Shown here: positions 1 to 55,980 of the stretch, piece by piece
How the letters are laid out: every line of letters starts with the position of its first letter
How positions within the stretch are numbered: the first letter of the stretch is position 1
Assembly: GCF_002571385.2 (NCBI RefSeq)
Contig: NW_019218150.1
Location: 111,151-168,059 of the forward strand
Source of the DNA: Stylophora pistillata
Lineage: Eukaryota
Direction of reading: 5' to 3'
DNA: 56,909 nucleotides
Made by a program: the position numbers and the translations under genes
Notes under the pieces: generated by a model
What the model saw: the letters and a program-made list of their open reading frames with translations, nothing else
Told to the model about the DNA's origin: nothing
Databases searched by the model: none

Positions 1-394
1 ACGGGGTCGGGCTTTGCACTAACTGCAATCTCAAAAACGGCGTCCTCTCCTTCTAGTAATTCCAGATCATTCATCAGTTTTTTGAACTCCGGTTTATTCG
101 TCGATTCGCTTACAACAAGACGCGTACTACACGACGCAGTTCCACTTTTGTTCTTAACAACACACTGGTAATCTCCGCTATCTTCTGGCCTGGCGTCCGA
201 GATGACAAGTGAGATGAGGTCACCCTCCAACCCTGTTTTAACCCGTCGGTTTTCACTTACAGGCTGACCATTCTTTGTCCACTCAATATTGGGTTTAGCA
301 GTGGCATTAAGGCGACATTTTAGTCTCGCTGTGCTTCCAATGGTAGCTTGAGTTTCTTCTAACGGTTGAGTGAACCTGGGTGCAGGTTTCTTCC
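1..394 (-). CDS. Ig exon (partial, continues past window edge)
   Basis: Acceptor ATGCAG|GG; reads KKPAPRFTQPLEE...KCRLNATAKPNIEW...DARPEDSGDYQC. Confidence 0.85.
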
Positions 395-6300: not shown

Positions 6301-9300
6301 ACTAGAAGCTCTGCTTCGCTTGATGCACTACCGAGCTCATTACGAGCCACGCATTTGTATTCGCCCTCATCGTCAAGCTCAGCTAGTCTGAACGATAAAG
6401 AAGCAAAATTGCCATCAAAGTTCAAGTTGATGCGCTTCGATTGTTTTACCGGCTCGCCATCTCTAAACCATTCAATGTTGGGTTGCGGTTCTCCTTTTAC
6501 CTCACACTCCAAGTTTGCTGGTTTACCTTCCACAACTGTAAGGTCTTGGAGGGGTTTGGCGATTTCTGGTGCTATTCCTTTCGGTTTCTTAGCTGTCAGG
6601 AAAAAAACACAGAAAAAGAATAATGCGTTATAATACTACGATCCTTAATTTAGTAAAAATTTATGAATGGTGCCACCATTTCAGTCCGGAGTTTGTTAAC
6701 ACATGGTACTCGAGAAGCTAAGGGGACAATTAAGAAAACACTTGATCAAACTCTCTAGCAACCCTATATACCTTATATGGTCATAGCTTCGGTGACAAGG
6801 TTTTCCGGAGGGAATATAGTCAAAGATCCCAGGAATAAAGGTAACATACCTTGTACCATTACATCAAACGTTCTGGTGGCAGTTCCCATCTTACTCTTGG
6901 CTTCACACTTATAAACACCAGAGTCATCCGCCCTGATGCCGAGAATCACCGCAGAATGTTTATCTCCACTTGCTTTAATGCCTAGCCTTGTACTCTGGCG
7001 AAGGGGTTTGTCGGCTTTGTACCATTTCACATCAGGTTTCGGCTTCCCAATGATTGTTACATTCAATTTACAGTCATCGCCTTCTATAACTGTAACTGGG
7101 GCCTCTTCCTGTCCTTCAGGAAATTCAGGAGCAAACAGCCTCTCCTTCACAGAGAGCTCACCACGTATTGTGGTCTTTCCAGCTTCATTGTAAGCGACAC
7201 ATTTATACATTCCAGCATCATCACGATTGACATCCTTAATGGTAAGAGAAAAATGCCCATTTTCCTGATCTTCTTTTATTTCAGTGCACTCGTCATTCTG
7301 GAGCCTAGCCGTCCCTCTCTACCACTCCACAAACGGTTCAGGATAACCGACGACAACAGCATCAAAGCTGGCAAAATCACCCTCAACTACTTCAACCCTT
7401 TTCAATTTCTCTTTAAAGTCTGGTTTAGATAGAACCCTCACTTTCAACGCTGCTGTGCACGAAGCAGAACCGAGTGCATTTGAGGCAACACATTTGTACT
7501 CTCCTTTGTCATCTGGCCTCGCATCTTTAAAAGAGAGAGAGGATGCCATCCCATCACTATCCAGCTTGATTCTTCCGCTCTCTTTCACTCGAACTCCATT
7601 TTTAAGCCACTCAAAGGTCGGAGGTGGTTCAGCGGTTGCTTTACAATGAAGCTTAGTTGTATCGCCCTCTTTCACTTCTATTGGTAGTAAGGGCTCTGTA
7701 AATTGTGGTGCACTGCCTTCTGGCTTCCTGGCTATTAAGGTTAAGTAGAAGGGTTTATAAGGTTTTTAATGAAAAAGCAAGCCCTAACCGTCTGTTAGTC
7801 AGTCGGCCTGTCTGTTAGTGGTGTGCAGGTCTAACTCAAACTTAATCCTTGGCTCAAACTTCATTTTACAATAACCTAAACTACACTCCCAGACACAACG
7901 GATGGGACAAAGAAGATGGACATTGGAAAGGAAAGAACAACAAACAAAGTTGTTCTGGAGAAGCGTGGATTGGGTATGTTAAGATAATAAGGACAGAGCT
8001 AATGGATAGACTAATGATTTTGGTGGAGTGCCAGTGAATGCACACTACGGCTACACACACATCCTCGGAAACCCAGGGGCAGTGAGTCGATTTCAAGTTA
8101 AGGGCAGAAGAGCCCCTGGGGACATTGTCTTACAAGACTACTTCCAAACGGTCGCAGTCGTTCTGGCATCTGATTGGTGCCAGAAAATCTTTGTTTTTTT
8201 TTTTGTTTTTTTTTTGTTTTTTTGTTTTTTTTTGCTAACAGTNNNNNNNNNNNNGCTAACAGTGGTGGAGTGCCAGTGAATGCACACTACGGCTACACAC
8301 ATTACCTGAAACTTGTACATCAAACTCCCTCTCCACAGAGCCTGCCTTGCTAGTGGCCTTAAACTTGTACAATCCAGAATCTTCTGGGACAACTTCCGTA
8401 ATTTTCAGCATATGCGTGTCCTCTCTGACAGAAACATGCAAATGCTCATCCTCTTTGACTTTTTTGTCATCTTTCAGCCATTCGACTTTCAGTTCTGGTT
8501 CGCTTTTTCTCAGCTCTGCACTCAAACTGACGTCACCTCCCTCTTCAGCGAAAATTGGGGCACTTTCAACTTCGTCAACAAACGCAAGGGCAGTCAGGGT
8601 CTCTTGCACAAAAATGTTGGCCTCACAGAATACCTCACCTTCTTCATTATATGCCAAACATTCGTATTTTCCAGCATCTTCTAGTTTTACGTCCTCAATG
8701 ATCAGTGAGGAGCGCCCTTCGTCTTCCTCATATTCATCATCCAAAAAAGTAAATCGCTCCGCTGGTTCTTCCAATATCTTACCGTCTTTCGTCCAATCAA
8801 CTTGTGGCCTGGGTACTCCAGTAATAAGCACATCAAACCTGGCTTGCTGCCCAGCCTGAACACTGACATTCTTCATTCTCTCTTTGAACTCCGGTTTTGC
8901 AGCTGGTTTGTTTACAAGAAGTTCAGCCCAGCAAGACACACTGCCAAACGCATTCTGAGCAACACATTTGTAGTCACCTTCATCATCAAGTTTAGTCTCT
9001 TTGAAATTCAAAGAGAAGGTTTCATTATCGCTTAAAAACTGTGCGCGCTCGCACTCCTTCACCTTTTCGTTGTCTCTAAGCCACTCTACCTCTGGCTTGG
9101 GCTGTCCGCTTATTTGACATTCTAACTTGGCAGGGAAACCTTCAAGAACCTGAACAGATTTTGAAGGTTCCACAACTTCGGGTGCTTTTCCTTCCAGGCT
9201 CTTTTCTGCAAAACAATGAGAAATGAAGCTCAGTTTGTTGAGAGTAAGAGAAGAGAAAACAAGTCTGCCTAAAATCACTGTCATCTTGCATCTGTTCGAT

Positions 9301-42300: not shown

Positions 42301-45300
42301 CCTGGGAAATTAATTTTAAATTTAGCTACAAAAGTGCTTAAAATTGAAATATTCCCAGAAAAAAATCCTAATCTTGCTTCAGTTGCTAGAACAATCGCTG
42401 GTGCCTCAAATATGAAAAATGCTCTAAACATCTGTACATCCTGCCAAGTCTTGCTCTTAGTAATGGTTGTCCTGAGTTGGAGGAATTTTTTTCTTTGTTT
42501 CATATTTTGTCATTTAGAGAAAATTTTATCAATTCAAATTGCTCATGATCAGCTAAAAATAAAAACAATGCGACAAAAATTAATTAAGGTTCAACTTAAG
42601 TAAAAAAATTTTCTGAGAAAAAGGCATGGCTCCACTGCCCTACCACTACTTGAATGGGTAGTTGAATGGTATTCATTGACTCTTGTCATTCATTTATATC
42701 CATGTGGAAAATCATTCAGGAGAAAAGAGAACAATACTTCCAGGGCAACTCCGTGTATTGGCATCAAGAATGGTGAGGAAATCACATAATTTTAACAGCT
42801 TCGCTCTTAAGTGAATCAGAGTTATCAAAACTCTGTTGGTTGACTGACTGCTCTAGGTGGTTGTCTCTTCACTCAGACAAGTCTTTCTCCAAAACTCACC
42901 ACCAGAATAGCAGAAGCTGGTTTGAAGATAGCTTTCGACCCACCAGCTGATGGCAAATGCTTCTACTACAATGCTTCTTCTCAAATCAGATTTAGTCCGT
43001 CAACATTGAATGCTGTCATCTTTCACTACTTGAAAAATCATCACTTCGATGTAAGTAATTGATTTTTTATGGACATTTTTGGTTGATTTCATTCAGGATA
43101 CGCGCAGAGATGCAAAAAGATTGCTTAGGATTTCATCAGTTTGAAACAATTGCCTTGTTGCCATGTTTTTCTATGAATTTGTTCTTTGAAGAATAAATGT
43201 AACAAATAAATGTAAATGTAACAAATAAAATTCTTAACATTTTGATTGTGGCTTGCATGGTTCACATGGCTCATCCTTGGCTCGCATGGCTCGCTGGCTC
43301 GCACGTTTATAACACTCACTTGTTGGGGGCTACTTACTTTTTGCAACTCATCAAGAAGTGCTTGTGACTCTCTCTGCATTTGTCCAGAGGCTGAAAGAAT
43401 GGCATCCTGCAGTTGTTCTTGCTGTACAAGTAATGCAGGTGATGCATCAACATTCTCTTTAGGCTCATCACTTGTCAGCTGATTGAAGAGCTCATCCAAT
43501 TTCCCAAACAGCTATCAAGAAAGCAAATCATTGATCAGGCAACTAAAACTTGCATTGAACCTTATTATCTGCACTAAAAGCATTTGGCACCTACCAGTTG
43601 TCTATGGCGATGGAAATCAAAGTACATTTTCCCCAGCTTAAGCCTGTATTCAAGTCGAGAAGAAAACCTCATCCACAAATCTTGTATATCTTTCACTTTT
43701 ACAATATCTTTTTTTGATTGCACATTCGACACATCAATCGCTTTGGCCATTTGATCTGCAAAAGCCTGCAAACAAACAAAAATTTGGTGAATACTGTAAA
43801 AGTTTAGTCCTGTACTAATTGCGTTCTTAATTGTTGTAACAAATTTGTGTCTTTCTTGACCCACTTTTATGGAAAAACAAACACCATCTTTTTCTATTAT
43901 TTTTTTTTTACTCATTCTTCTGAAAGCACTGTTTGGTGCAACCCCTATTGGTAATATTATCACACTAGAAAAGGCATTCATGAATATTTGGTCAAGTTAC
44001 AGGTAAAACAATAAAACTAGACTAAAAATACTCTTTTATGAAGCAGTTCTAAAGATGCTGACTGTCTAAAGAATCAGTAAATGGTTGCTAAATTACACTT
44101 AGTGCATTTACTGGCTGGAATGAATGTGTTAACAGCTGTACATGCAACTCCAAACAAGGGCCTGATCAAAATCTGGTGCATAACTTTGCCTAACACAGAT
44201 GTGCAATTACCAAATATTGATACAAGTAGAATTAATAAGCAGGTAATTTGCCAGCTACAGTTTCTAACCTGTCTCTCAGAATCCAGTTCTTGATGTGAAT
44301 ACAGAAATTCCTGTGATGTTTTGACAGAATCACCCATTACTGTGTTGCTATCAAGAAAGTCTTCACCAACATTCCTAATCCAACCACAGAGCTAAGTAGA
44401 AAAAAAAAAAACTTAAACAGCAAGTACTGGTATACTAATCAGTGACACTTAGAAGATAGTTTAAGAAAAATAAGATGACCATCTCAACCAACCAAATACA
44501 AAACTAATAATCAGTCACTACTTAATCACTTGCATTTCCCTTCACTTGTGCTCATTAATGTGTTAATAGCCAGTCCCCTCCTTGGTTCCTTGCAGAATTA
44601 CCTTTTTCTGATACAAAAGACTACCTGACCGTCTGCTTAATGCTGGTTTCACAAAACTCAGGATAAAGATGAGAATCTTACATCTTCAAATTCCTTGTCA
44701 GCAAGATCAGGTTCAACATTAACAAGCATAGCTGTACTTCTCTCCTGCAATTCTTCATACATTCTCACAATCACAGGTTGGTGTTTCCCATCTGCCATTT
44801 TCTCTTGCAATATCTTTCCGTCTCGCAGTTGAGCTGCAGATGCTGCATTGATTGCTCCATACAGCTCCTTTTGATCTTCAATGGTCAGCTTTTCTTCTGT
44901 AATTTTGTCTCTTATTTCATCAAGCTTATCATGTGCCTTAAAAGAAAAAAAATAAAATAAAATAACCAGGAAAGTTTGGAAATTTCAGTATGAAACTAAT
45001 GGTTAGGAAATGCCAACAACTTCAGACAAATCAAACATCACTAATACTGTGACTTACTCTGCTGTTTTTCTTGTAAAAGGTTAGTGTATCTGTCAGTAGT
45101 TTCCTTCTATCTTCCAAACGTTCTTTGAATAACTGCAGGTTTGTTAGTAGCAGGGTAATTTTTTGCTGTGTTTCCTGTATGTCACTGAAGTTTCCATGCA
45201 TAAGCTTTTCTGTTTCTCGTGCAAGCCTCTGGCCAGCCTCTTCCTTTTCCTGATAGTAAAAAGGAACTATTGCTTACAATTTTTAACCAAATTTTATTAT

Positions 45301-48300
45301 TTATCAAATCCTATAAATTTCTTATCAGACGCTCAACAGCTCATCTTGTAAATGCAATGACACTCTCCAATAGTCACTTCTTTAAAATTATTATTCACTA
45401 ACCTTTCACTTAAACAAGCAATAACTCTGAGAACTGATTACACAGTATAAATAAGAATCATATACATAGAGAGGCTAGCAACTGGCACTCAATTCTTGCA
45501 CCCACGAGTTATGAAAAGCCAAGGATATGTTGGCCAGTGAATCAACAACAATTCATAAACATACCTTTGCCACTTCCTCAAATTTGAAGTGTTCATCGAG
45601 GAGAACTTGAGTTGAGGGTGCCGAGTCTCCATAGTCTTGATAGCTAAGATAATCCTCTCCTTCCTCATTTAGCCATTTTGTGATCTGTTGGATTGTTGTT
45701 ACAAAAGTTACTCTTAAGGATCACAAATATCACCTTCTTTGGCTAACCCTAAGAATACTGTGTTGTAGTTATACAAGCCTGTGGTCTAATGGCACCCGGT
45801 TGCCAGAGACCACTAACTTTTGGCTTCCAAGACAACTGATTAAAAAAATGCCAGTCGCCCAGCCGGTCATTCTTGTCCCTCCGTTCAGTTCCATAGTATA
45901 CAAGAATGCAAAAATATGTGACATGCTGTTTTCCATTTATTGTGTAAATAATGCCTCGTGGAAATTTCCTTTGATGCCAGATAAGCTCACCTGTTTACTC
46001 TCATACGTTCAGATCTTAAGTTTTGTTCCACATGATTTGACAAATATCTAACACTACGATCTCAGACAAAAGACATGAACCTGCTGAATATCAGTACCAT
46101 TTCTCAAAATATTATCTAAATTTTCCCTTAGGCTGTTTTATCATTGTTTACTTTATTGTTACAAATACTTTCCAAACCGCAAAGTGTGAATTGCCATGTT
46201 AAAAGTCTTTGTTTATGCAAATGTATACGTTTTCTGGTCAGCATAATTTGATAACTTGTTTGCACAGGGTTACCTAGCTTTTGAAGGTTAGTTTTATTTC
46301 TTTGGAATAAATATCTTGACGATGAAATGATCAATGCTAGATAGCTGCAAGAATGAATTCACTTAATTGGTAGGAATACAGTAGCACAGTTGTATTGATC
46401 TAGTATAAATTTCTCTATTACTTCTTGACACTTTCCATCCATTTGCTACTGTAATAGCTAATTTTAGCTTTTGCAGCAAATACATGTATTACAGTAACTG
46501 TATCCACGTAAATGCAAAAAAAATTAATAAAAAGCAAGGTTTCACAAACATGATTCCCTCCAAAATAATTGAAAAGAAACCAGATTTACAAATAAAGGAA
46601 CAACATGGATCCAAACATGGGACAGGTATATTCTGTAAACAAACGATTGCAAAGCATTTGTATTTGTAGTTGATGGCAACAACAAAAAGTGCAGACATTC
46701 ATCGAGAATAAAATAACAGGGTTAATTATTGATTAATCAAAACATTTGTGGAATTAATTAAATAATTAATTAATTATCAATTATTTAATTGATTAATCAA
46801 TTTAATTTTGGGGGAGGACACTAACTTCAAGGGCTGGGCACCTTATTTAGCTGGCATGGCTGGGGGTCCAAAGGGCACCCTAGAATTTTCCTTACACCAC
46901 AGCCATAATATAATTATGTTATCTTAAAAAATATGAGTACACCATTATAAGAGGATATAATACCCAAAAACATATCACAAATGACTCAGCCAGAGAATGA
47001 TCCAGAAACTCAAGATCAAGAATCCAGTTCACATATCATTTAGCTTCAACATCTATTGCTAAACAAAGATTAGGAACAATTCAATATCCTAGAAATTTTT
47101 TAGATAAGTAACTTTTAATGGTCCAAAGCCTCCTGATACCTGTCTTATTTCTTCATCAATCTTGCATCTTTTCATACACTGCTCCAAAACTTTTTTTCGC
47201 TCTTTCCACTGTTCATCAAGTTGCTTTCGCCTGTGTTGCAGGGCTTCCAGAATACGTTCCACACTGTAACATGCTGCTTTTGTGGCATGATGGTTGTTTA
47301 TGTCAGCATGTGAACTAGCCTCTCGTAATTTGTCCAAGAGAGCTTGTCCTTTAGATAAAGTCTGCATGGATAATTCCAATACACTTTTTCTTAGTTCCTG
47401 ATGTTGATGAAGCAATGATGATGATGATGTCACATCTTCCACTAAAAGAGTTCGGCTGATTTCATCTTCTGAGGTATTGATTTTATCAGAAAACTGTACA
47501 AAGTCAATTCAAAACAAAATATACATTATTAATTGCAAATTCACCACTCAGGTCATGGTAAAATAATTATTATCTAAAAAGCTAAGCTGTAAAAAACTTT
47601 CACATTCTGGTATACTTAAGGAATACAAAATTTAGGTCATTACTTTAATTGATTCTACCTGATTTGAACAAATTATAAGGAAACAAAATTAATCCATCAA
47701 ATTGAAGATTAGGAGTTTTATTGTTAATTAATAAATTTGTAGTTTCATTGACAGTTTTGGAAAATTCTCAAGATTATGTCAGGGTTTGCCTTTATTTAAG
47801 CCGAGCAGTGCTTTGTGGCCTGTTGTTATGGAAGACATCCCACCCTAAGTATAAGCATTAAATGAAAAATCCATGATGCTACCTTACGCTTTTATACTTA
47901 AGAGATCTGTCATTATGAAAAAGAAGAAATGAAAAGCACTGCCAAAAATCAAACTGTAACTGCAGGAAAGAACCTGCCAAATATTAAGTTATAACTAAAA
48001 AGTAAGAAACTGTTAGTGTAGATAGTGACCAGCAATATTTTCCAAACAGGATAAAACCATTCATCTTACAATAAAAAAGGGGATCTTCTGTTCATTAATT
48101 TCTTTCTTAAAGAATTGTTTTAATTAGAATCATTTATATCTCAATCAACATGACCTAAGGATATTTTTAGCCAAGCATGAAAAAATTAGCATTCCTCAAT
48201 TTTGAACATTGTCAATGAAGAAAAGTGATTAAAGCAATCCATCAAAATGTTGACTGGTTATATATACCACTTAAATCATAACTATTAGCAACTCTTAACT

Positions 48301-51300
48301 CCATAAAAGTGAGCTTTGGTTACATTACATCTTTAAAAACATAAAAGGCAAGTTGACATCATGCTTGACTGACCACGATCAACAAAACCTTTAAGAGTGA
48401 AATTACAGGAGATCATGTAAAACCAAGAATATCGACCTATGGCTATCACTAATGAAATATGGATAACATTTTTTCATTAACAAAGCATCCAAATTACTAT
48501 CTGAGATAAAAGATGTCCACACAGATTGTTTGGTGTATCTATCTGTTGTGATTAAAATTCCAATCACCAATTTACCAATTAAATTCTCAAAACCCAAAAT
48601 AAAAATTCCTAAATTAACAACTTCACAAATCAGACATCATAAATCCTTGGATAAATTCCATGGATTATACCTTAGCTACAGATATGAAGGCTTTAAAGGA
48701 TCAACTTTTAAGATCTACAAAACAGACTGCACAAAGAAAGGTATATTTAGCATTCAACAGATCATATACTCACAGTCTGTAGCGGGGTCACAAGAAAAGC
48801 GACAAGAATTTTACGGTAAAATGGACAGATGGAACAACTAGATCAAAAGCTTGGCCATGCAAGTGTAGAGGAGCCAATAAAAATCATTATCCCATAAAAG
48901 GTATCATTTTCATAAATCTTAACATTAAATACCAGTTACCATGCATTCTACAGATTTTTTAGGGCAAGATTTTTTCTTACATACAGGGCCACACTTTTAA
49001 ATTTTTTTAACAAGTAGACATTCATTTTATTCAAAAACTACAAAATGAACCATAATATACATGTATACTGGTACTGAAAGCTACAACAGCCTATAGAAAT
49101 TAGTAATTCTCTCAAGCAATCAAAATTCTGGTAATAATTAAGAAACTCAAATCATTACATTTCATAAAAATAATTTGAAAAAGAATAGGATTGTAAATTG
49201 TGACAAATTGTAAATAATAATAAAAAATAGAAAAATAAACAGCTTTGTTCTAAAAAAAAAAATTATAATACTAGTAATTGCAAGTAACTACTTGTAATCA
49301 CCACAATGTATTTTGCACAAAACCAACCATAATTTCATTAAAAATTAAAACAAGTAATAATTATGGTCTTCTAAGTGAAATAACTGATATCTTAATCAAC
49401 CACATGTTATTCTAAAAGCAACAGCAAAGTTTAACTAATCAAAAACCTTGACAGTTGTAAACCCTCTTTCAGAGCATTACACCTCACTTTAATAAGAGTT
49501 ACATACAATTTAGAACTGCATATCAGGGGTAGCCAGCATGTCACTCAAAAAAACAGAATACAAGTCAGGGGCGAAACTGTAATGATGGGCCTCCTCATTA
49601 TCTGGGTTTTCACCTAAATGACATTAAGGTTTTTCTCATTGCTTTCTTAATAGAAAAATAAAATGTGATATGAAGTATGGGTATTTTCAGTTTAGGATCC
49701 ATTGTGAGTTGTGTATTTCTTTGTAGAGTATAGTATTAGTAAATGGTGATAGCATGGGGTGAAGTGTTTTAAGATCATAATAAGGTTGTAGAGAAAATAT
49801 TTCTAAAAGAAACATAAAAATTGTAACTATTATGGAAAATAGATATCAACACACCAAGAGTCAGGCATGACTAATATCAATGAAGGTTTCAGTATAACAA
49901 ATACTTAATCCATGAACCAAACTCAATACAACTGTGTTGGAGGTCATCCACATCTAATTCCATCATACACTGTACCTTCTCTACACTGTGATGAAAAGCA
50001 ACTGAGGTGTCAAGAAGTATCCTCCTTCCCTCTAATTGAACATTAAGGTCATTCCAGGCCTCTTCTAGAGAATCTGCCATCCTTCCATAGGGTCTGTTAC
50101 TTTGATCTTCTGCTGAAGCTACATGTATTGACTTGATAATCTGAATGAGCTCAGCAACTTCTCTTTCTTTTTCCTGGAAATGAACATTTAAGGAAAATGT
50201 CATAAACAAATCATGATAAGTAAGAGTAAGAACAAAGTGTACAAATAACAACTAATGATAAAATAAGTATCCAATGAAAAGATTGTGGCCAACAAAAAAC
50301 ATCTGAAGGTTATAAAAAGATAATCATTTCAAGTGTTACTTAGACAGTGATATGACCTGACTGCACATGCTTTTTTATAATTGTTTTTGCTTCTAAAAAT
50401 TCCCAATAAATAGATACAGAGCCCTTTATCTGAGTAGCAAATAATCTGTGTATTTCGGGCAGTATATTGAACCTGTAAAGTACCTTATTAGTGTAAAAGT
50501 CCTTCACGTAATCTATTCAAGGCCTCTTCAACTACAAATAACTCATAAATTTAAGCTTATTGCATATTGTAGACAATCAGTGATATTTTATTTGACCTTT
50601 TGACCTTGTTTACCGCAACAGAGTTGTTCCTAAAATCGTCTTGAAGAGATTTCAGGAATAAGGCGAGAATGTTTTATTCATAACCAGTATGCCACTTCAA
50701 AGGACAAAAAAATATGCGAAACAAAATATACACATGGATTGTGGGCCAAGCAAAAAACAAAGTCTCTTTAGTACATGCAGCTATAAATGGATACCGACGT
50801 AAAGACATAAGAAGTTTTGATTAATCTCGTCAAAACAATTTAGAAGAACTAAACAGACGGTCACCTTCGGTATTTTGAAGAAATTGAATTACTCAGGAAT
50901 GCTCTCGGTGGCTGATCTCTTATCGCTCCGAAAGGCTCGTCTTCGATGTTAAATTGCGATTTGTTAACAAGAAATCGACTCTTAAATTCCATCTCCTTGA
51001 GTCCATTAACATATAACAAAGAATTCTTTCGTTTTGCTCGATCAATCTCAAGAGTTAATTAGAGAGGTTTTACATCCCGCAACCATGTTCATAGGAAATT
51101 ACATTATCGCCATTGCCTCTGGCGTTATAATTAACACGAAATGTCCATTTCATCGACTATCAATATGTCGATCTACAGCCAGAGATATAATTCACTGGGT
51201 TTAAAATGAAATCTGCCTTTCGTGTTTAACGTTTGTGACTAAAGTCCTTAAATACTTTCTCTTCTTAAGAATCCATGTATTTTGTAAACACTGACCCGTA

Positions 51301-54300
51301 ATTCCCGCACAGAAATAGCAATGACGAAGCCAAATATCTAAGTAATGTTCATGATTATTAAGAATCTTCCTAGCCAAGGAAGTATACCAAATCAGGTCCC
51401 TGTGATATTGTATTCGACTCGAATGTTTCAGTGGTTGTATACAAATTGGCAATTAGTACTTATACACAATAACAATGATTCACTGCTCTTTTGCCAGCAT
51501 GGATTCGCACTATCTTTCAAAACGCATGATAGTTGTAAAGTCTCTGAGCTGTTTAAAACTCGGAAAGGAAATTATATTATAATCGAACGCCAAACTGAGT
51601 GCGATAGAACACCTGATCGAATGAACAGAAACTACAAGGATGTGTTACTATTCACTTTAGGCGAGTCTTGACGAGCAATTGTGACAATAAAATGGCTCAG
51701 TTCTTCCTTTGCATCGTCCGGGATGAGAATATGGCTTCAACGAAAATAAACATCGTGAGTGCTTTCATTATCTTACCTCCTCTCAGGATTTATAAACTCA
51801 AAATCCAACAATTGCGAATTAAATTGATGCAGCAATATTCAGCCAAAAGCTCAGGTCGCCAGTCAAGGCTGATTATTTATGCAAACTTAAAATGCCGAAA
51901 CATGCCAACCCACTTAAGTTCAACCACATTCCAATGCGCTCTCCACGCCCCAGTGAACAAATACTTTTCATGCTTGAGGCAAATGTGTACGCTCATTCGA
52001 CCAGAACTCGCTCGGCCGCAGACACAACGAAAGGTGTCACATTACATGTCTGTTAAATAAAAACATCACTTATTAAACGAGCTGCCAGCAAAGACGATTT
52101 ACAATCCAAGCCATGTCACCTCGTCGAGTTGCCGTATCTATAGGTAACTGAATGTAAACTGCGTGTTTACAAAGGTCGATTAATATACTTTTCGATTTAC
52201 ACTCATGGGACGACAAAACAGTTGGCGCACTTTGATAACTTGGCGTGACAGAGAGACAATCTATCGCATTAAGAACATCTTTTTTTTTAGTCTTTACTTC
52301 AAACCTGTGTTATTAAAGATAATTTTTATTGCAACGGAAACGGTTCTAGTTTGTACTAATTTTATAAAAAGTAACTTACGAATTCTGACAACTTATCATG
52401 CCGGGATAAGGGTTTTTCTTGGAAAAACAGGTTAAATTTCTCGGAAATTTGGATGACCTTTTTTGCTCTCACTGTCCGCTAAGAATCGTCACCATTTTAA
52501 ACTGATTAATATCATGTTCATTGTTCTCATTTCCTTGTAACTTCGAACGTAACTTAGTAAAAAACCTCGAGGCACAAATCCCTTCGTATGCCGGTTTTAA
52601 AAGAGAGGAAACTGCCCGGAGTTTTGAGACTCTCAAGGAAGATTACAGTGACGAACCCGAGAAAACGAGAAGTACAGCTGCCGGGAGTAAAGCCATTGCT
52701 CTCTAAGAAGAAGTTCAATGCTCCGAAAAATCTTATCGATAATCGTCATATTTTTAAAGCCTCTGTTGAAATGTCACCTTTGTCGGAAGAAATGCCCTGA
52801 GCGATCATGTCCTCATTTTACACAGGTGCTGAAAACTAATATTGATTGATGCAAATATGGCTCCTTAGATAAGTTGAAAAACATTCTTCAAACGTGGGGA
52901 AGGCGTTAGACGAACAAGAATACTACCCGGGGCCAACTTAAGGTGAAAGTTAACCTTAAATTTGTTCGAAATCTCGCATGTCTTGAGACGCTTCGAGCTA
53001 ACAGACAGTTCAAAAGCAGTTACAGTCTAAATTACATCTTTCAATCAATTGTTCTCCCTTAGTAAAAAAGCTGGTTCCCCTTAAAACTTTTTAAACAGCA
53101 TGAGTACATTCTTTCGACCAATCCGCAACACACGAACGCATCACGTGATACAAACCTTGAGTCTTTCTTCCAGTCCCTGTAGGTCAGCACTAAGCGCTTC
53201 AGCTTCGGTCAGGTTTTCACCAATCATGTGTTTGTTCTCTTCTGTTTCGCTGGTTCTGTCTTTAACCCACTGAAGAAGCTTTAAAGTAACAACGAAGAGA
53301 GACTTAATCATCTCCAAAACTGATAAAGGATAGGCGTCTAGTTTAAGCCCTTAGGCTCTATTTAGATCGCAAACGACTAACCTCACAGTCGTAACAAAGT
53401 TGTTAAAACTGCATTACCAAGATTTTAAAGGGTAAAGTAATTAGACCTGTCGATCAAATCTACTGTATGAGGTTATTTTTTTTAAACATATGGTTCACCT
53501 CTCGCATCTGTTGTTCATAGTCTCCGAGTTTCAACCAATGGCGGAGTCGCTCGTCCCTGTCTTGCCACACTCTTTCCCAGGCCATTTTTCTCTCCTCCAA
53601 GTCGGCCAGAGATTCCTCTAAGAGATGAGGAGGCCGATTTGGTGTCCCGTTCTCTCCATACAGTGGAGGTAATTGCATTCTGTCAATCAAGGTTTTCCCC
53701 ATGGCAACCGTCTCAGCGTATTCTTTGTCGATAGAGTGTCTTGTTTCAGAGTGTCGGCGAATTTCTTCCTCGATGAACTCAGCTGTGAGGTCTTCCAGGA
53801 GGTCCTCTCTCATGTATCTTCCTCTGTGCCCCTCAATATCTTGGACAAGCTATATAATATAAGAATAGTTCTTAGAGTTTGTCAAAGTAGCGGCTAAAGG
53901 GTATTCTGTGTATGATTATTTAAAACAAGTTGAACTGTAGGTATGACTTTTGCCTCTAATTGTAAAGTTGACTAACGAGACGTGTAAAGATTCCTTAGAA
54001 TTCCTGTCAGCCAGTACCTCATGTCGAGAGACACATTACAACGGCTGTGCTGGTCTGGGCATGAACCCTTAAAGCTCCAACGGAAGTCGAATGCATTTGC
54101 TATTCAGTTATTAAACCATTACACTTACGCTACTTCCTTAAATGACTTTGGTAGTTTCTGCTATTTTACCTTCTCCGCGCTCCGACGAAACATGAGCGCC
54201 ACAGAGAGTCTCGCTCCTCGTTCAGCCATAGCCGATGAAAATTCACTCCAAGCGCTGTTTAACTTTTCCTCCATTTGATAGTTTGGGGTCAGTTCATAGC

Positions 54301-55980
54301 GACACGTGCGACGGAGAACTAATGAGGCCTGGAGAAATTGTCGACCATAATCATATGTACTCTACAAAAAAAATAAATAAATAATCTAATTAAAATTCTC
54401 ATTCAGATGAAATTACTTTTCAGAATATTTAAGATGTCTCTCCTAAACAACTGTTCCTCGCGAGTTGGAGCGGCATTCGGAGTTTTCTTTTCTGATCACG
54501 GCTGTGTCATGGACTGAAAAGTCCACGTTTCTCGACAATTCCAAATAAGTTTTAATAATGTTTAACTTCTAACCTCAAAACCTATTCGAGATGTAAGTTC
54601 ATATCTCGTTCAAGGACTGACGACAACTACACTGATCTCAAGCGGCATCTTACTTTAGCTGTAGTTTCAAGCTTCTCATGTTCCTGTTGCAGAGCCTCGA
54701 TATCCTCAGAGTTCCTTCCCACATCTCCCAGGTTATGCTCCGTTGCGTCACGCAGTTGACTTATCCACACAGTTGCCTGATTAATTCAAAGTCAGACATG
54801 AGTTGTCGTTTTTACTTATTTCACATTTGAAGATACCCTCCCCCCTCTCTCCCGTCGGAGAACTATTCCGTGATTGCTAAAAAGATATATCATTAGCAAA
54901 AAAGGATTTATTCCTTCTCACCTATTTCTAGATCATTTGTGTACTTTTTCTTTACCTGCTCAGCATCTCGTTCGCTCTGTTTGAGCTGCAACAGTTGCTG
55001 CAGTTTGATTCTGCGCACATCACACAACTCGTCTGTGCGAAGTTTCCGCTCTCTTAGTTCGTCCAAAGTGAGCCGCACATGCGCAATGCCCTTTTCATAA
55101 TCCTGAGTGACGTCATCACCCCGCATATTGGACATTGGGCTTGTCATCAATTCTTGAACAGCCAATGCATCTCGCAAGGTGTCCTCAGACGAAACGGAAA
55201 CGGCTGAGTGTAAAAGGGAAATATTACATCATGCGTTACAATGAAATGCATGGCCTAACGAAGGGACCCTGTTAGGTAAAATACTCATTAGCACACATTT
55301 CACTCACCCTCAGCCTTCTCTTCCAGTGTTCTGAGCATGCTCTCTGCGGACTCATAGTCGTACATAAGAACAGAATCCGAACACAGCAGTTCAAATAAGT
55401 CATCCAAATTAACTGAGCACTGAAATAAAAAAAGAAAAAAAAGAAAAAAAAGAATATAACTTCAGTTGAAGTTCATAAGAAGCGTACAATTTAACTAAAC
55501 AGTTTCTTACTCAATTCTCTCACTTGATTCTTTCCCTAAACCCGACCAATCAGAATTAATTAATCTGGGAGGTGGAGACATCAACTGGACAGAAGACAAA
55601 TAATTCATTGATTGGTTGCCAATTCACAAAGTTTATCATTCAAATCTAGAAATGGTAAACAACAAGCTGTTTTCAAAGACGTCAGGTCACTGACTGGCAA
55701 GAATAAAGTTTATTACATCTTATCTGGGAATTGTAGCACTAGACTCCAATGATTGTAGAAAAATATGAGATTTAAACGCTCTCCTCACCTCTCCGGCACT
55801 TTTGTGAAATTTAAGTGATGTGAGTATGATATCTCTCCTTCTGTTCATCCGCAAGGCAAAGTTACGACAACCTCTGTCTAGGAATTCCTTGCGACTCTTA
55901 ATATCTCTGGAGGCATAGTGATTTTCCTGGAGCATTTTCTTGGCAAGTTCACGCACCTGAGCGAAGTGGTTTATCACTTC
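1..55980 (-). CDS. Giant multi-exon gene (partial at both ends): spectrin repeats (SESTD1/CCDC141-like) + DH + SH3 + ~62 I-set Ig; titin/sallimus/obscurin/Trio-family giant protein
   Basis: 58 GT-AG-bounded exons with compatible phases join into one reading frame (one internal TAG at 7319-7321). Ig I-set motifs (P.F...L, C...G.P.P...W.K, D.G.Y.C.A.N), spectrin W/L heptads, DH CR1/CR3 and SH3 motifs. Confidence 0.9.
617..1501 (-). CDS. 3-Ig exon (885 bp, phase 1-1)
   Basis: CAG acceptor, G|GTAAG donor; ORF 582-1340 extends upstream in frame. Confidence 0.9.
1760..2653 (-). CDS. 3-Ig exon (894 bp, phase 1-1)
   Basis: TTTCAG acceptor, G|GTTAG donor; ORF 1755-2684. Confidence 0.9.
2929..3813 (-). 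CDS. 3-Ig exon (885 bp, phase 1-1)
   Basis: CAG acceptor, G|GTGAC donor; ORF 2900-3829. Confidence 0.9.
4229..4558 (-). CDS. 3' part of split 3-Ig unit (end of Ig2 + Ig3)
   Basis: CCAG|GT AAA ACC acceptor, G|GTAGG donor; with 4807-5358 totals 882 bp. Confidence 0.85.
4807..5358 (-). CDS. 5' part of split 3-Ig unit (Ig1 + most of Ig2)
   Basis: TAG acceptor; G|GTAAGG donor after YKCEASNQG. Confidence 0.85.
5864..6592 (-). CDS. 2-Ig exon + acidic linker (729 bp, phase 1-1)
   Basis: ORF 5856-6533; CAG acceptor, G|GTAGT donor. Confidence 0.85.
6850..7731 (-). CDS. 3-Ig exon (882 bp, phase 1-1) with in-frame TAG at 7319-7321
   Basis: ORFs 7319-7675 and 6773-7210 share a frame; reads VEW*RGTARLQND; intact splice sites. 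Confidence 0.75.
8061..8242. repeat. Interspersed repeat fragment (atcctcggaaacccaggggcag...) ending in T-rich run next to a small N gap
   Basis: GC-richer block between two copies of a 39-bp sequence; resembles a repeat family I recall from coral genomes. Confidence 0.4.
8306..9205 (-). CDS. 3-Ig exon (900 bp, phase 1-1)
   Basis: ORF 8256-9383; TTGCAG acceptor, G|GTAAT donor. Confidence 0.9.
9482..10366 (-). CDS. 3-Ig exon (885 bp, phase 1-1)
   Basis: ORF 9462-10379; TTTAG acceptor, G|GTAAG donor. Confidence 0.9.
10804..11685 (-). CDS. 3-Ig exon (882 bp, phase 1-1)
   Basis: ORF 10796-11872; TAG acceptor, G|GTGCG donor. Confidence 0.9.
12169..12564 (-). CDS. linker + 1-Ig exon (396 bp, phase 1-1)
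   Basis: ORF 12095-12595; TTCAG acceptor, G|GTATA donor. Confidence 0.8.
12914..13166 (-). CDS. 1-Ig exon (phase 0-1)
   Basis: ORF 12879-13166; CTAG|GTG acceptor, G|GTAAT donor. Confidence 0.85.
13567..14189 (-). CDS. 2-Ig exon (phase 1-0)
   Basis: ORF 13555-14307; CCAG acceptor, GAG|GTTAG donor. Confidence 0.85.
14737..15020 (-). CDS. 1-Ig exon (phase 2-1)
   Basis: ORF 14678-15043; phase-2 start matched by microexon 15740-15764. Confidence 0.8.
15201..15686. mobile_element. Fold-back relic of a Penelope-like retroelement 3' end
   Basis: ~240-bp inverted arms; left arm (minus) encodes PNLNVQTDSIRAKLFV*, resembling PLE GIY-YIG endonuclease C-termini; each arm has a hammerhead-like motif. 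Confidence 0.75.
15559..15601 (+). ncRNA. Minimal type I hammerhead ribozyme motif (U3-A8 variant)
   Basis: ttgac-TTGATAA-t-gacgtta(tgt)taacgtc-GAAA-cGTC-gtcga: stems I and II pair, palindromic ACGT stem III. Confidence 0.6.
15740..15764 (-). CDS. 25-bp microexon (EPSDDEKVI), phase 1-2
   Basis: TTTCAG|AA...AT|GTAAG; needed to keep frame between flanking Ig exons. Confidence 0.8.
16022..16330 (-). CDS. 1-Ig exon (309 bp)
   Basis: ORF 16014-16436; TACAG acceptor, G|GTTTG donor. Confidence 0.85.
16495..16736. mobile_element. MITE with ~70-bp TIRs and internal TAATGTAA microsatellite
   Basis: gaccactttcataaatggc...gccatttatgaaagtggtc; inner arms aaattagcctttctggcc/ggccagaaaggctaattt. Confidence 0.8.
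16994..17375 (-). CDS. linker + 1-Ig exon (phase 0-1)
   Basis: ORF 16941-17321 extended to TTTAG acceptor. Confidence 0.85.
17583..17782 (-). CDS. P/E/V/S-rich linker exon (phase 1-0)
   Basis: GTAG|GA...CAG|GTATC; phases match neighbours. Confidence 0.75.
18291..18590 (-). CDS. 1-Ig exon (300 bp)
   Basis: ORF 18274-18798; ACAG acceptor, G|GTACG donor. Confidence 0.85.
18966..19853 (-). CDS. 3-Ig exon (acceptor at 19853 or 19868)
   Basis: ORF 18922-19815; G|GTCAG donor; two in-phase AG options. Confidence 0.85.
20258..21136 (-). CDS. 3-Ig exon (879 bp; third Ig divergent)
   Basis: ORF 20214-21161; CACAG acceptor, G|GTAAT donor. Confidence 0.85.
21785..23830 (-). CDS. 6-Ig exon with linkers (2046 bp)
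   Basis: ORF 21774-23951; TATAG acceptor, G|GTAGC donor. Confidence 0.9.
24979..29372 (-). CDS. 14-Ig giant exon (4394 bp, phase 2-1)
   Basis: ORF 24944-29386; CACAG acceptor, G|GTAAG donor. Confidence 0.92.
29789..29849 (-). CDS. 61-bp acidic mini-exon (GESEGELDVNDETDSSNLA), phase 1-2
   Basis: TTTACAG|CC...AT|GTAAG; supplies the needed phase change. Confidence 0.8.
30144..30198. repeat. (CAT)n/(AAT)n microsatellite
   Basis: Visible trinucleotide runs. Confidence 0.9.
30448..30732 (-). CDS. first 1-Ig exon (285 bp)
   Basis: ORF 30392-30751; CATAG acceptor, T|GTAAG donor. Confidence 0.85.
30940..31119. mobile_element. Palindromic Penelope/retrozyme-type relic with hammerhead-like core
   Basis: ~85-bp near-perfect inverted arms centred on cgaaggg(c/t)taacgctcgaaac(g/a)tcagct. 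Confidence 0.7.
31120..31883. other. Assembly gap (N run)
   Basis: Ns; could hide symmetric phase-1 exons. Confidence 0.99.
32017..32065 (-). CDS. 49-bp microexon (ASERKVAEVAPVEFVS), phase 0-1
   Basis: AAG acceptor after pyrimidine tract, G|GTACG donor; phases fit. Confidence 0.65.
32488..32537 (-). CDS. 50-bp microexon (EYTVNLKSKPGSKFPDE), phase 1-0
   Basis: TTTCGTAG acceptor, GAG|GTAGG donor. Confidence 0.7.
32741..32991 (-). CDS. Degenerate SH3 exon
   Basis: CIALEDY...ICIRKEETVVVL...IWVPVTVL resembles ALYDY...G.VP motifs. Confidence 0.75.
33168..33220 (-). CDS. DH domain C-terminal helix exon
   Basis: AGKEVVDRLCAEINQKTR; phase 0-2. Confidence 0.75.
33359..33499 (-). CDS. DH domain CR3 exon
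   Basis: IKELLDRPVERVLEYKTFLDDML ~ L..YLIKPVQRITKY.LLL..L. Confidence 0.8.
33636..33725 (-). CDS. DH domain exon
   Basis: EHELDRYITFCVGKSDSDRFLESQPKDFFE. Confidence 0.8.
33845..33914 (-). CDS. DH domain exon
   Basis: IFCDELAKCKGNPSEVGKVFKKR; phase 2-0. Confidence 0.8.
34229..34326 (-). CDS. DH domain exon
   Basis: DYIYQL...KDTIFINSEDIFFFHK ~ IF.N.E.IY.FH. Confidence 0.8.
34434..34791 (-). CDS. linker + DH CR1 exon
   Basis: RMNAITDKLIESEGKYVDDLRSL ~ R..I..EL..TE..YV.DL. Confidence 0.8.
34902..35734 (-). CDS. E/T/V/K/P-rich disordered linker exon (833 bp, phase 0-2)
   Basis: ORF 34898-35761; TTTCAG acceptor, CC|GTAAG donor. Confidence 0.8.
36052..36375 (-). CDS. last spectrin-repeat exon (324 bp)
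   Basis: ASVWISDSEHFL...; phase 0-0. Confidence 0.8.
36505..36789. mobile_element. MITE with short TIRs (agtggcggatccag...ctggatccgcccctg), hAT-like ends
   Basis: Terminal inverted repeats, G-rich subterminal; no clear TSD. Confidence 0.65.
37068..37377. mobile_element. Bipartite hairpin repeat/MITE
   Basis: Arms tcttattaaccaag/cttggttaataaga (37068-37213) followed by tttattatacgact/agtcgtgtaataaa (37216-37377). Confidence 0.6.
37395..37586 (-). CDS. spectrin exon (192 bp)
   Basis: MEARWQRFLSRMEDHRAMLEASIEFH. Confidence 0.85.
37824..37946 (-). CDS. spectrin exon (123 bp)
   Basis: TTAG acceptor, AAG|GTAAC donor. Confidence 0.75.
38351..38677 (-). CDS. spectrin exon (327 bp)
   Basis: ORF 38339-38668; phase 0-0. 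Confidence 0.85.
38835..39115 (-). mobile_element. tRNA-derived SINE
   Basis: A box TAGCTCAATGG, B box GGTTCGAGCC, then SINE-like body; 3' end approximate. Confidence 0.7.
39848..40039 (-). CDS. spectrin exon (192 bp)
   Basis: RTDEDVQAHL...LLSMSATFYSSVEK. Confidence 0.8.
40466..40908. mobile_element. tRNA-containing repeat, one full and one partial copy in inverted orientation
   Basis: tRNA-like A/B boxes on minus ~40540-40612; 40466-40582 pairs with 40741-40867. Confidence 0.7.
41265..41387 (-). CDS. spectrin exon (123 bp)
   Basis: VILWIKEQSDTFF...KFKDAAR. Confidence 0.8.
41823..42002 (-). CDS. spectrin exon (180 bp)
   Basis: ORF 41802-41984; GAG|GTAAG donor. Confidence 0.8.
42059..43317. 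mobile_element. Non-autonomous Mutator-like DNA transposon, 9-bp TSD
   Basis: TSD acttgttgg at 42050-42058 and 43318-43326; degenerate TIRs with tandem tgcgagcca-type subrepeats. Confidence 0.7.
42844..43050 (+). pseudogene. OTU-like cysteine protease N-terminal fragment inside transposon
   Basis: Open frame RIAEAGLKIAFDPPADGKCFYYNASSQI...VIFHYLKNH, followed by GTAAGT; matches D-G-N-C-F OTU Cys loop. Confidence 0.55.
43338..43511 (-). CDS. spectrin exon (174 bp; alternative donor at 43320)
   Basis: ORF 43125-43499; AAA|GTAAGT donor. Confidence 0.8.
43595..43765 (-). CDS. spectrin exon (171 bp)
   Basis: DLWMRFSSRLEYRLKLGKMYFDFH. Confidence 0.8.
44269..44391 (-). CDS. spectrin exon (123 bp)
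   Basis: LCGWIRNVGEDFL...MGDSVKTSQEFLYSH. Confidence 0.85.
44682..44936 (-). CDS. shortened spectrin exon (255 bp)
   Basis: Open frame between TTAAG and GAT|GTAAG. Confidence 0.75.
45058..45249 (-). CDS. spectrin exon (192 bp)
   Basis: FKERLEDRRKLLTDTLTFY. Confidence 0.85.
45565..45684 (-). CDS. spectrin exon (120 bp)
   Basis: ITKWLNEEGEDYL...GDS...LLDEHFKFE. Confidence 0.85.
47140..47493 (-). CDS. spectrin exon (354 bp), CCDC141-like
   Basis: ORF 47089-47442; ACYSVERILEALQHRRKQLD. Confidence 0.85.
49976..50173 (-). CDS. spectrin exon (198 bp), CCDC141-like
   Basis: YGRMADSLEEAWNDLNVQLEGRRILL. Confidence 0.85.
50605..50992 (-). CDS. Candidate alternative first coding exons (50865-50992 + 50605-50629)
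   Basis: GAGATGG start, AG|GTGAC donor, 25-bp phase 2-0 exon joining 50173 in frame; no homology support. Confidence 0.35.
53156..53278 (-). CDS. spectrin exon (123 bp)
   Basis: LLQWVKDR...IGENLTEAEAL. Confidence 0.85.
53499..53849 (-). CDS. spectrin exon (351 bp)
   Basis: ORF 53460-53813. Confidence 0.85.
54170..54361 (-). CDS. spectrin exon (192 bp), SESTD1-like
   Basis: STYDYGRQFLQASLVLRRTCR...LNSAWSEF...ERGARL. Confidence 0.85.
54654..54776 (-). CDS. spectrin exon (123 bp)
   Basis: ATVWISQL...VGRNSEDIEALQQEHEKL. Confidence 0.85.
54956..55203 (-). CDS. spectrin exon (248 bp, phase 1-0), SESTD1-like
   Basis: DVRRIKLQQLLQLKQSERDAEQ. Confidence 0.85.
55308..55419 (-). CDS. spectrin exon (112 bp, phase 0-1)
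   Basis: LDDLFELLCSD...LRTLEEK; G|GTGAG donor. Confidence 0.8.
55789..55980 (-). CDS. spectrin exon (192 bp), most upstream exon found in window
   Basis: ORF 55720-55977; NHYAS.DI...FALRMNRRRDII. Confidence 0.85.

What the first reader, a model, noticed from the sequence alone, without database searches (positions are those of the whole stretch)
1..55980. One continuous reading frame joins SESTD1-like, CCDC141-like, RhoGEF/SH3 and titin-like Ig modules (>8,600 aa)
Seen: splice phases are compatible across all 58 exons, including microexons that fix frame. Recalled similarity: 54-56 kb peptides (STYDYGRQFLQA, DVRRIKLQQLLQL) resemble SESTD1; 47-50 kb peptides (MADSLEEAW..L...LE.RR.LL) resemble CCDC141. 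Known: SESTD1, CCDC141 and TTN are neighbours on human 2q31, and Drosophila zormin/sallimus links spectrin and Ig arrays. Inference: an ancestral unsplit Trio-related titin-like gene in a probable cnidarian. I recall a fused arrangement being proposed for cnidarians, so check novelty; the retained DH-SH3 bridge is the informative part.
Basis: partly seen in the sequence, partly recalled or inferred. Interest (0 to 1): 0.85.

Follow-up and report, generated by a model that had tools for sequence, protein, structure and literature searches.

The report
Coral giant titin-like "connectitin" gene
The window holds the middle of one very large coral muscle/cytoskeleton gene in which parts that are three separate human genes (SESTD1, CCDC141, titin) are still joined. 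The join is real and seen in RNA, but this fused gene ("connectitin") was already described for cnidarians, including a coral, in 2025.

Summary
On the minus strand, SESTD1-type spectrin exons (56-54 kb) and CCDC141-type spectrin exons (50-36 kb) lead into a disordered linker, a split DH (RhoGEF) domain and an SH3-like exon. At least 57 I-set Ig domains follow (30.7 kb to base 1).

- **RNA support:** contigs from two independent studies join 12 exons from 36375 to 30448 through GT..AG introns. These exons form one open frame of 867 codons.
- **Large N gap (31120-31883):** it lies inside an intron that the RNA splices across.
- **12-N gap (8243-8254):** it sits 52 nt into an intron. This is inferred, not seen in RNA.
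- **Flanks:** Sec14-like exons lie upstream. Downstream lie a second SH3-DH(-PH?) module and at least two kinase domains.
- **Organism:** a coral.

Hanashima et al. 2025 (PMC12198301) named this fused gene "connectitin" and reported it in Acropora, Nematostella, Hydra, Aurelia and Trichoplax.

One detail may add something. A PH-less DH-SH3 module sits exactly at the spectrin/Ig boundary, separate from the downstream SH3-DH module. I could not see the paper's figure to check whether this is already shown.

I searched no joined spliced protein; all searches were exon by exon.

The parts
54956..55980 (-). SESTD1-type spectrin exons (55980-55789, 55419-55308, 55203-54956)
   Evidence: Pfam Spectrin_SESTD1 E 6e-11 and a weak Spectrin hit. 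A whole-genome scan puts the two best PF24915 matches of this genome here. The crinoid protein P0040 aligns colinearly.
52203..54776 (-). Further spectrin-like exons, including 54361-54170 (STYDYGRQFLQA)
   Evidence: tblastn P0040 aa599-662, 41% identity, E 6e-11. The peptide was located. Exon borders come from the DP model only.
49905..50173 (-). First CCDC141-like exon (contains MADSLEEAW, internal to the exon)
   Evidence: tblastn P0040 aa936-981 and amphioxus P0013 aa108-142, 63% identity; peptide located.
47140..47493 (-). DUF7799/Spectrin_7 exon, CCDC141-type
   Evidence: Pfam DUF7799 E 7.5e-13. Best long relatives are titin-like and CCDC141-like proteins, not kalirin.
36799..45684 (-). 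Remaining spectrin-like exons, all phase 0, often in 192 + 123 nt pairs
   Evidence: DP model. Homology support exists for 45684-45565, 44391-44269, 40039-39848, 38677-38351 and 37586-37395. Exons placed at 42.2-43.8 kb are doubtful.
36052..36375 (-). Last spectrin-like exon
   Evidence: RNA contigs X3 and X6; borders and frame.
34902..35734 (-). Linker exon (277 codons, no Pfam match, acidic/Thr-rich)
   Evidence: RNA contigs; no Pfam match; translation.
33168..34791 (-). DH (RhoGEF) domain split over exons 34791-34434 (last ~30 codons), 34326-34229, 33914-33845, 33725-33636, 33499-33359 and 33220-33168
   Evidence: RNA-defined exons. Pfam RhoGEF E 9.6e-5 on exon 33359-33499, profile positions 124-165 of 180. 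All nine PDB hits are Trio/Kalirin/p63RhoGEF DH domains. Five successive exons have colinear top hits in the kalirin DH domains.
32741..32991 (-). SH3-like exon
   Evidence: SH3_KALRN E 0.019 and SH3_2 E 0.07. PDB sequence hits are only SH3 domains. The AF2 model is all-beta with pLDDT 57, and the top Foldseek rows are SH3 at E >= 0.25. The exon is 75-98% conserved in other corals.
32017..32537 (-). Two micro-exons (32537-32488, 32065-32017) linking SH3 to Ig
   Evidence: RNA contigs. The same order is seen in the spliced protein P0173 of another coral.
31120..31883 (.). Assembly gap, intronic
   Evidence: The joint 32017>30732 is present in X3 and X6, and the contig coordinates leave no room for an exon in the gap.
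30448..30732 (-). First Ig (I-set) exon, phase 1-1
   Evidence: Pfam I-set E 3e-27; RNA contigs.
29789..29849 (-). Predicted 61-nt exon that carries phase 1 to phase 2
   Evidence: DP model and strong splice sites. Not seen in RNA here.
24979..29372 (-). Single 4.4-kb exon with 14 I-set domains
   Evidence: Pfam I-set, 14 stretches, E 0.
1..23830 (-). About 28 further Ig exons, mostly phase 1-1. They run off the window's start
   Evidence: Pfam I-set in all long open segments; DP model.
8243..8254 (.). 12-N gap, inferred to be intronic
   Evidence: The Ig domain ends at ..FDVQVS. The donor CAG|gtaatg lies at 8306 in phase 1. The gap is flanked by a duplicated 9-mer and a poly-A run.

Best explanation
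The window is the central ~57 kb of a single minus-strand gene of roughly 100 kb. It is the coral orthologue of 'connectitin', the unsplit SESTD1-CCDC141-titin gene that is a paralogue of Trio/Kalirin.

Order along the protein:
1. Sec14 (upstream flank).
2. SESTD1-type spectrin repeats.
3. CCDC141-type spectrin repeats.
4. A disordered linker.
5. DH without PH, then SH3.
6. About 60 or more I-set Ig domains in the window.
7. In the downstream flank: more Ig, an SH3-DH(-PH?) module, and Ig-kinase units.

Inferred mechanism, from the titin, obscurin and Trio families and not tested here: the protein is a giant filament-associated scaffold. The Ig chain would give length and elasticity. The Sec14/spectrin end would anchor to membrane or cytoskeleton. 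The GEF modules and kinases would couple the scaffold to Rho and phosphorylation signalling in coral myoepithelial or other contractile cells.
For: Shown:
- Domain content by Pfam.
- Twelve RNA-joined exons in one open frame across spectrin > linker > DH > SH3 > Ig.
- The X3 contig is 12,208 nt and extends 5,146 nt 5' of 36377. My model places only about 4.8 kb of exon between there and the window's end. The contig should therefore cover the CCDC141-like exons, which need 2.7 kb, and very probably the SESTD1-like exons.
- A fused crinoid Sec14/SESTD1/DUF7799 protein aligns colinearly from 63.3 to 44.3 kb.
- Colinear Sec14 hits lie at 67.5-63.2 kb.
- Ig+Pkinase (E 1e-74) and a second kinase exon lie 23-33 kb downstream on the same strand.
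- A second module, SH3 then DH, lies 11-15 kb downstream.
- This genome's best Spectrin_SESTD1 matches are in this gene.
- The published cnidarian connectitin architecture matches.
Against: - Only 6 kb of the window was laid with RNA.
- The SESTD1-to-CCDC141 link and most Ig-Ig links rest on homology, phase regularity and a self-trained gene model.
- The Sec14 domain was not found by the Pfam family scan of the genome or by Pfam on upstream open segments. It was found only by weak colinear tblastn hits, and 3.7 kb of N lies between it and the window.
- DH and SH3 are below Pfam's curated cut-offs at exon level.
- Internal promoters and shorter isoforms are not excluded.
- The function is wholly inferred.
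Confidence: 0.85

Rival explanations
1. There are two or more neighbouring genes: a SESTD1/CCDC141-like spectrin gene and a titin/obscurin-like Ig gene with its own promoter. The apparent continuity would come from read-through or chimeric contigs.
For: In bilaterians these are separate neighbouring genes. KALRN uses internal promoters. Only contigs, not single molecules, were seen, and the tool warns that a contig across two genes shows no single transcript.
Against: Two studies give the same 11 canonical in-phase junctions from the last spectrin exon into the first Ig exon, with an unbroken 867-codon frame. A related coral has a spliced SH3 > micro-exon > Ig product. No stop or terminal exon is seen at the boundary.
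Confidence: 0.07
2. The gene is the coral Trio/Kalirin orthologue with an expanded Ig region, not a connectitin.
For: It has Sec14, spectrin, DH, SH3, Ig and kinase in Trio-like order. The DH and SH3 exons hit Trio/Kalirin structures best.
Against: The CCDC141-type exon scores far better with titin-like and CCDC141 proteins than with kalirin. Stronger CRAL_TRIO_2 loci exist elsewhere in the genome, for example C3 at 58 bits. That locus is a candidate true Trio but was not examined. There is no PH after the first DH. The published trees separate cnidarian connectitin from cnidarian Trio.
Confidence: 0.04
3. The continuity is an assembly artefact, with unrelated pieces joined at the N gaps.
For: There are two N runs inside the window, a 3.7-kb N block just upstream and a duplicated 9-mer at the small gap.
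Against: RNA splices across the large gap. The same Ig exon type and phase occur on both sides of the small gap. Strand and domain order are consistent over about 105 kb.
Confidence: 0.03

Closest known systems
Connectitin (Hanashima et al. 2025, J Mol Evol 93:306; PMC12198301): cnidarian/placozoan SESTD1-CCDC141-titin connected gene
   Same: The architecture matches: Sec14 (flank), many spectrin repeats, numerous Ig, RhoGEF and SH3, and kinases at the C-terminal end (flank). It is found in a coral, and SESTD1-type comes before CCDC141-type before Ig.
   Different: The paper's text places RhoGEF/PH/SH3 'in the central region'. Here one PH-less DH-SH3 module sits exactly at the spectrin/Ig junction, and a second module, SH3-DH(-PH?), lies about 40 kb further on. 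I could not view their Fig. 7 to see whether both modules are drawn. The species may differ from their Acropora millepora.
Trio/Kalirin
   Same: The order Sec14-spectrin-DH...SH3...Ig-kinase is shared. The DH and SH3 exons are most like Trio/Kalirin/p63RhoGEF DH and the Kalirin SH3.
   Different: There is no PH after the first DH. There are dozens of Ig domains instead of one. The spectrin repeats are of SESTD1/CCDC141 type. The genome holds other, stronger CRAL_TRIO_2 loci.
Titin (TTN) / Drosophila sallimus-zormin
   Same: Long tandem I-set Ig arrays in large phase-1 exons, giant size, and a kinase near the C-terminal end.
   Different: No FN3 super-repeats, PEVK or Z-repeats were seen in the window. 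It carries spectrin, DH and SH3 parts that bilaterian titin lacks.
Obscurin / UNC-89
   Same: Ig arrays plus an SH3-DH(-PH) module and two kinases, both in the downstream flank.
   Different: Obscurin has no Sec14/spectrin N-terminus. The paper reports no separate OBSCN in cnidarians.
SESTD1 and CCDC141 (human 2q31 neighbours of TTN)
   Same: There are Spectrin_SESTD1 and DUF7799/Spectrin_7 matches in the same order as the human genes.
   Different: Here they are exons of one transcript that continues into DH, SH3 and Ig.

Membership tests
Connectitin | SESTD1-type then CCDC141-type spectrin repeats in one gene | tested here: met
   Pfam PF24915 at 55 kb and PF25075/PF25101 at 47 kb. A fused crinoid protein aligns colinearly.
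Connectitin | Spectrin part and Ig array on one transcript | tested here: met
   The X3 12.2-kb and X6 4.1-kb spliced contigs, with an 867-codon open frame.
Connectitin | N-terminal Sec14 domain | tested here: inconclusive
   There are four colinear tblastn hits to kalirin/crinoid Sec14 at 67.5-63.2 kb, with E from 6e-6 to 0.025. There is no Pfam hit, and N blocks lie upstream.
Connectitin | Numerous Ig domains | tested here: met
   At least 57 I-set stretches in the window.
Connectitin | RhoGEF, PH and SH3 domains | tested here: inconclusive
   DH is supported in the window and in the flank. SH3 is weak in the window and E 1.7e-4 in the flank. PH is absent after the first DH and only weakly hinted after the second.
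Connectitin | Two or three C-terminal kinase domains | tested here: met
   Pkinase E 1e-74 (L009) and Pkinase N-lobe exon E 2e-11 (L008) on the same strand downstream. A possible third is seen only by tblastn.
Trio/Kalirin orthologue | DH-PH tandem after the spectrin repeats; spectrin repeats of Kalirin type | tested here: not met
   Only about 30 codons lie between the DH end and the SH3 core in the RNA-defined exons. The DUF7799 exon is 24% identical to kalirin but 35% to titin-like.
Titin sensu stricto | Ig/FN3 super-repeats and PEVK | tested here: not met
   No fn3 family appears in any Pfam scan of the window's long segments. The downstream flank was only partly scanned.
Obscurin/UNC-89 | SH3-DH-PH module with Ig arrays and two kinases, no Sec14/spectrin head | tested here: not met
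   The module and the kinases are present in the flank, but the gene has a Sec14/spectrin head.

The most novel reading that the evidence does not exclude
Cnidarian connectitin keeps two distinct GEF modules. One is a PH-less DH-SH3 placed exactly at the spectrin/Ig boundary. The other is an obscurin-like SH3-DH(-PH) deep in the Ig array. They share intron positions, for example the donor right after the '...VEV' of the first DH helix. If this has not been described, it fixes where the Ig array expanded relative to Trio's GEF1-SH3-GEF2 layout, and it puts titin-like and obscurin-like hallmarks in one transcript.
Probability: 0.3. Interest if true: 0.45.

Novelty: already known. Interest (0 to 1): 0.27.

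Why it matters
The gene bears on the origin of titin and of muscle. A single cnidarian gene that joins the SESTD1, CCDC141 and titin parts supports descent from a Trio/Kalirin-like ancestor and a later split in bilaterians. That argument is already in print.

This window adds three things:
- Genome-level exon structure. Spectrin repeats are phase 0, often as 192 + 123 nt exon pairs. Ig exons are phase 1, including one exon with 14 Ig domains.
- Direct RNA evidence for the spectrin-DH-SH3-Ig junction in a coral.
- The position and PH-less nature of the first GEF module.

Tried and rejected
- **Pfam on whole open segments of the bridge:** it gave nothing. DH and SH3 only appeared when the RNA-defined exons were scanned singly at loose thresholds.
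- **Natural spliced proteins from databases:** the big-exon search returned only single-exon Ig ORFs of 1,300-1,500 aa. The DH-start search returned only genomic ORFs that read into the intron after '...LAEV'. Only P0173 was spliced, covering SH3 to Ig.
- **SH3 fold:** the AF2 model was of low confidence (pLDDT 57). Foldseek gave no match at E <= 0.001, and the top rows were SH3 domains at E >= 0.25.
- **Sec14:** the genome scan with CRAL_TRIO_2 found no hit on this contig, and Pfam on ten upstream open segments found nothing.
- **Paper supplements:** they gave no domain table.
- **First gene-model pass:** it over-extended exons and placed a false exon in a tRNA-like element. Retraining fixed the RNA-defined set.
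- **Joined spliced protein:** none was sent to any search, fold or alignment tool. The only joined operation was a local count of stops and phases, and nothing joined was printed.

Full report
**What is in the window.** All long stop-free segments lie on the minus strand. Pfam on those segments, given by reference, shows the following:
- Immunoglobulin I-set arrays in every long segment from 30.7 kb down to base 1. One 1,484-codon open segment carries 14 I-set domains, and the total is at least 57.
- A SESTD1-type spectrin repeat at 54911-55228 (PF24915, E 6e-11).
- A DUF7799/Spectrin_7 repeat at 47092-47508 (E 7.5e-13).

No FN3 family appeared in any scan.

**Organism and prior art.** Sequencing runs that hold the stretch are labelled coral or 'organism A'. 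The genome is 397.6 Mb, and the window is contig C366:111151-168059. A full-text search found Hanashima et al. 2025 (PMC12198301). That paper proposes that SESTD1, CCDC141 and titin descend from one gene, 'connectitin', a paralogue of Trio/Kalirin. It reports the connected form in Aurelia, Hydra, Acropora millepora, Nematostella and Trichoplax. The architecture it gives is Sec14, more than 10 spectrin repeats, many Ig, RhoGEF/PH/SH3 'in the central region', and two or three kinases.

**Gaps first.** I laid RNA contigs and reads on 30380-36379.
- A 12,208-nt polyA contig (X3) and a 4,120-nt contig from another study (X6) show the same eleven junctions.
- After applying the tool's 'cut +1' notes, all introns are GT..AG on the minus strand.
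- The exons are 36375-36052, 35734-34902, 34791-34434, 34326-34229, 33914-33845, 33725-33636, 33499-33359, 33220-33168, 32991-32741, 32537-32488, 32065-32017 and 30732-30448.
- A local count gives 0 stops in 867 codons in one frame, against 51 and 82 in the others. By my arithmetic, a random 867-codon frame would be open with probability about 1e-18.
- The 764-N gap lies inside the intron 32016-30733. The 99 nt of contig between the SH3 exon and the Ig exon equal the two micro-exons, so no exon is hidden in the gap.
- The 12-N gap at 8243-8254 lies 52 nt past a consensus donor (CAG|gtaatg, exon end 8306, phase 1). That donor follows a complete Ig domain. The gap is flanked by a duplicated 9-mer and a poly-A run. 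This second gap was not checked with RNA.

**The bridge.** The linker exon (277 codons) has no family match.

The DH domain is split over six small exons, and the evidence for it is concordant:
- The 47-codon exon 33359-33499 matches Pfam RhoGEF (E 9.6e-5, profile positions 124-165 of 180). This is below the curated cut-off, as expected for a fragment.
- All nine of its PDB sequence hits are Trio, Kalirin or p63RhoGEF DH domains.
- Compared exon by exon with a shark kalirin, five successive exons each have their best hit inside a DH domain. In DH1 numbering the hits are colinear: 1234-1292, 1306-1327, 1330-1349, 1359-1382, 1412-1441.

The SH3 reading is weaker but consistent:
- SH3_KALRN scores E 0.019 and SH3_2 scores E 0.07.
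- All four PDB sequence hits are SH3 domains, led by Kalirin-9a SH3.
- The low-confidence AF2 model is an all-beta barrel. Its top Foldseek rows are SH3 domains but not significant.
- The exon is 75-98% identical in other corals. One database protein from another coral (P0173) is spliced SH3 > micro-exons > Ig.

Only about 30 codons separate the DH end from the SH3 core, so there is no PH domain there.

**Rest of the window.** I built a splice-aware model. It uses a three-periodic Markov coding score and retrained splice matrices, and it allows only stop-free exons between AG and GT.
- It recovers all 12 RNA-defined exons exactly.
- It gives an unbroken chain from 56597 to base 1, with 74 exons and 26,765 nt.
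- Spectrin-part exons are all phase 0, often in 192 + 123 nt pairs, which together make about one repeat.
- Ig exons are phase 1-1, or pairs that sum to a multiple of three.
- Several 18-27 nt exons, and those placed at 42.2-43.8 kb, are doubtful.
- The step from 30448 to the 14-Ig exon needs either a 61-nt exon with strong sites (29849-29789) or the acceptor at 29397. Either keeps the frame.

**One gene or several.**
- The X3 contig extends 5,146 nt 5' of 36377, while my model places about 4.8 kb of exon between there and the window's end. The DUF7799 exon is reached after 2.7 kb. The contig should therefore include the CCDC141-like exons and very probably the SESTD1-like ones. This is an inference.
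- A crinoid protein that Pfam shows to be CRAL_TRIO_2 + Spectrin_SESTD1 + DUF7799 aligns colinearly from 63.35 kb to 44.3 kb.
- The DUF7799 exon's best long relatives are Saccoglossus titin-like (35% identity, E 3e-27), an amphioxus spectrin+Ig protein and lungfish CCDC141. Kalirin reaches only 24% identity and E 1e-10.
- The genome's two best Spectrin_SESTD1 matches are in this gene.

**Flanks.**
- Upstream, kalirin's Sec14 residues 48-189 hit four colinear exons at 67.5-63.2 kb, with E from 6e-6 to 0.025. Pfam found nothing there, and 3.7 kb of N separates them from the window.
- Downstream on the same strand, Ig exons continue.
- At about -10.9 to -14.8 kb there is an SH3 (SH3_1, E 1.7e-4) followed by a second DH. 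RhoGEF profile positions 1-22 score E 1.5e-4, and positions 116-149 score E 3e-3. A weak PH hint follows.
- At about -23 to -26 kb there is a kinase N-lobe exon (E 2e-11).
- At about -32 kb there is an Ig+Pkinase exon (E 1e-74). A possible third kinase lies near -37 kb.
- The two DH modules resemble each other and share at least the intron after the first helix.

**Verdict.** I rate it 'already known'. The one detail worth checking against the paper's figure is the PH-less DH-SH3 module at the spectrin/Ig boundary, which is distinct from the downstream SH3-DH module.

All searches were by exon or open-segment reference.

Noticed in passing
window 30940-31119 (next to the N gap at 31120): A near-perfect hairpin of about 180 nt with arms of about 88 nt. 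It shows enormous summed depth in all RNA runs (about 1e5), many loose ends and many reads that fit two places. It looks like a multi-copy fold-back (MITE-like) repeat inside the intron and is probably why the assembly broke here.
   Followed up: partly
window 40539-40611, minus strand: Rfam tRNA match (40.8 bits, full length) inside an intron of the spectrin part. It could be a tRNA gene or a tRNA-derived SINE. The first gene-model pass wrongly put a 39-nt exon in it.
   Followed up: no
L007:5146-9040 (C366, about 11-15 kb downstream of the window start): A second GEF module in the order SH3 > DH > weak PH. Its first DH exon is 46% identical to the DH start in the window and has the same donor position after '...VEV'. 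This suggests that the two modules are paralogous.
   Followed up: partly
window 36-56 kb: Spectrin-part exons are all phase 0 and recur as 192-nt and 123-nt exons. The 192-nt exons are 55980-55789, 54361-54170, 45249-45058, 40039-39848 and 37586-37395. The 123-nt exons are 54776-54654, 53278-53156, 44391-44269 and 37946-37824. That is about one spectrin repeat per exon pair.
   Followed up: no
window 33168 (exon 33220-33168): Both RNA contigs carry T where the genome's plus strand has C, at the last base of this exon. That made the joint look non-canonical (CT..CC). With the border at 33168 the intron is GT..AG. It is probably a strain or allele difference.
   Followed up: partly
G000:C3:590292-590815 and G000:C48:292654-292899: C3 holds the genome's strongest CRAL_TRIO_2 match (58 bits), a candidate true Trio/Kalirin. 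C48 holds a Spectrin_SESTD1-like match inside a 2,476-codon open frame. Neither locus was examined.
   Followed up: no
It was not searched at looser thresholds.
   Followed up: no
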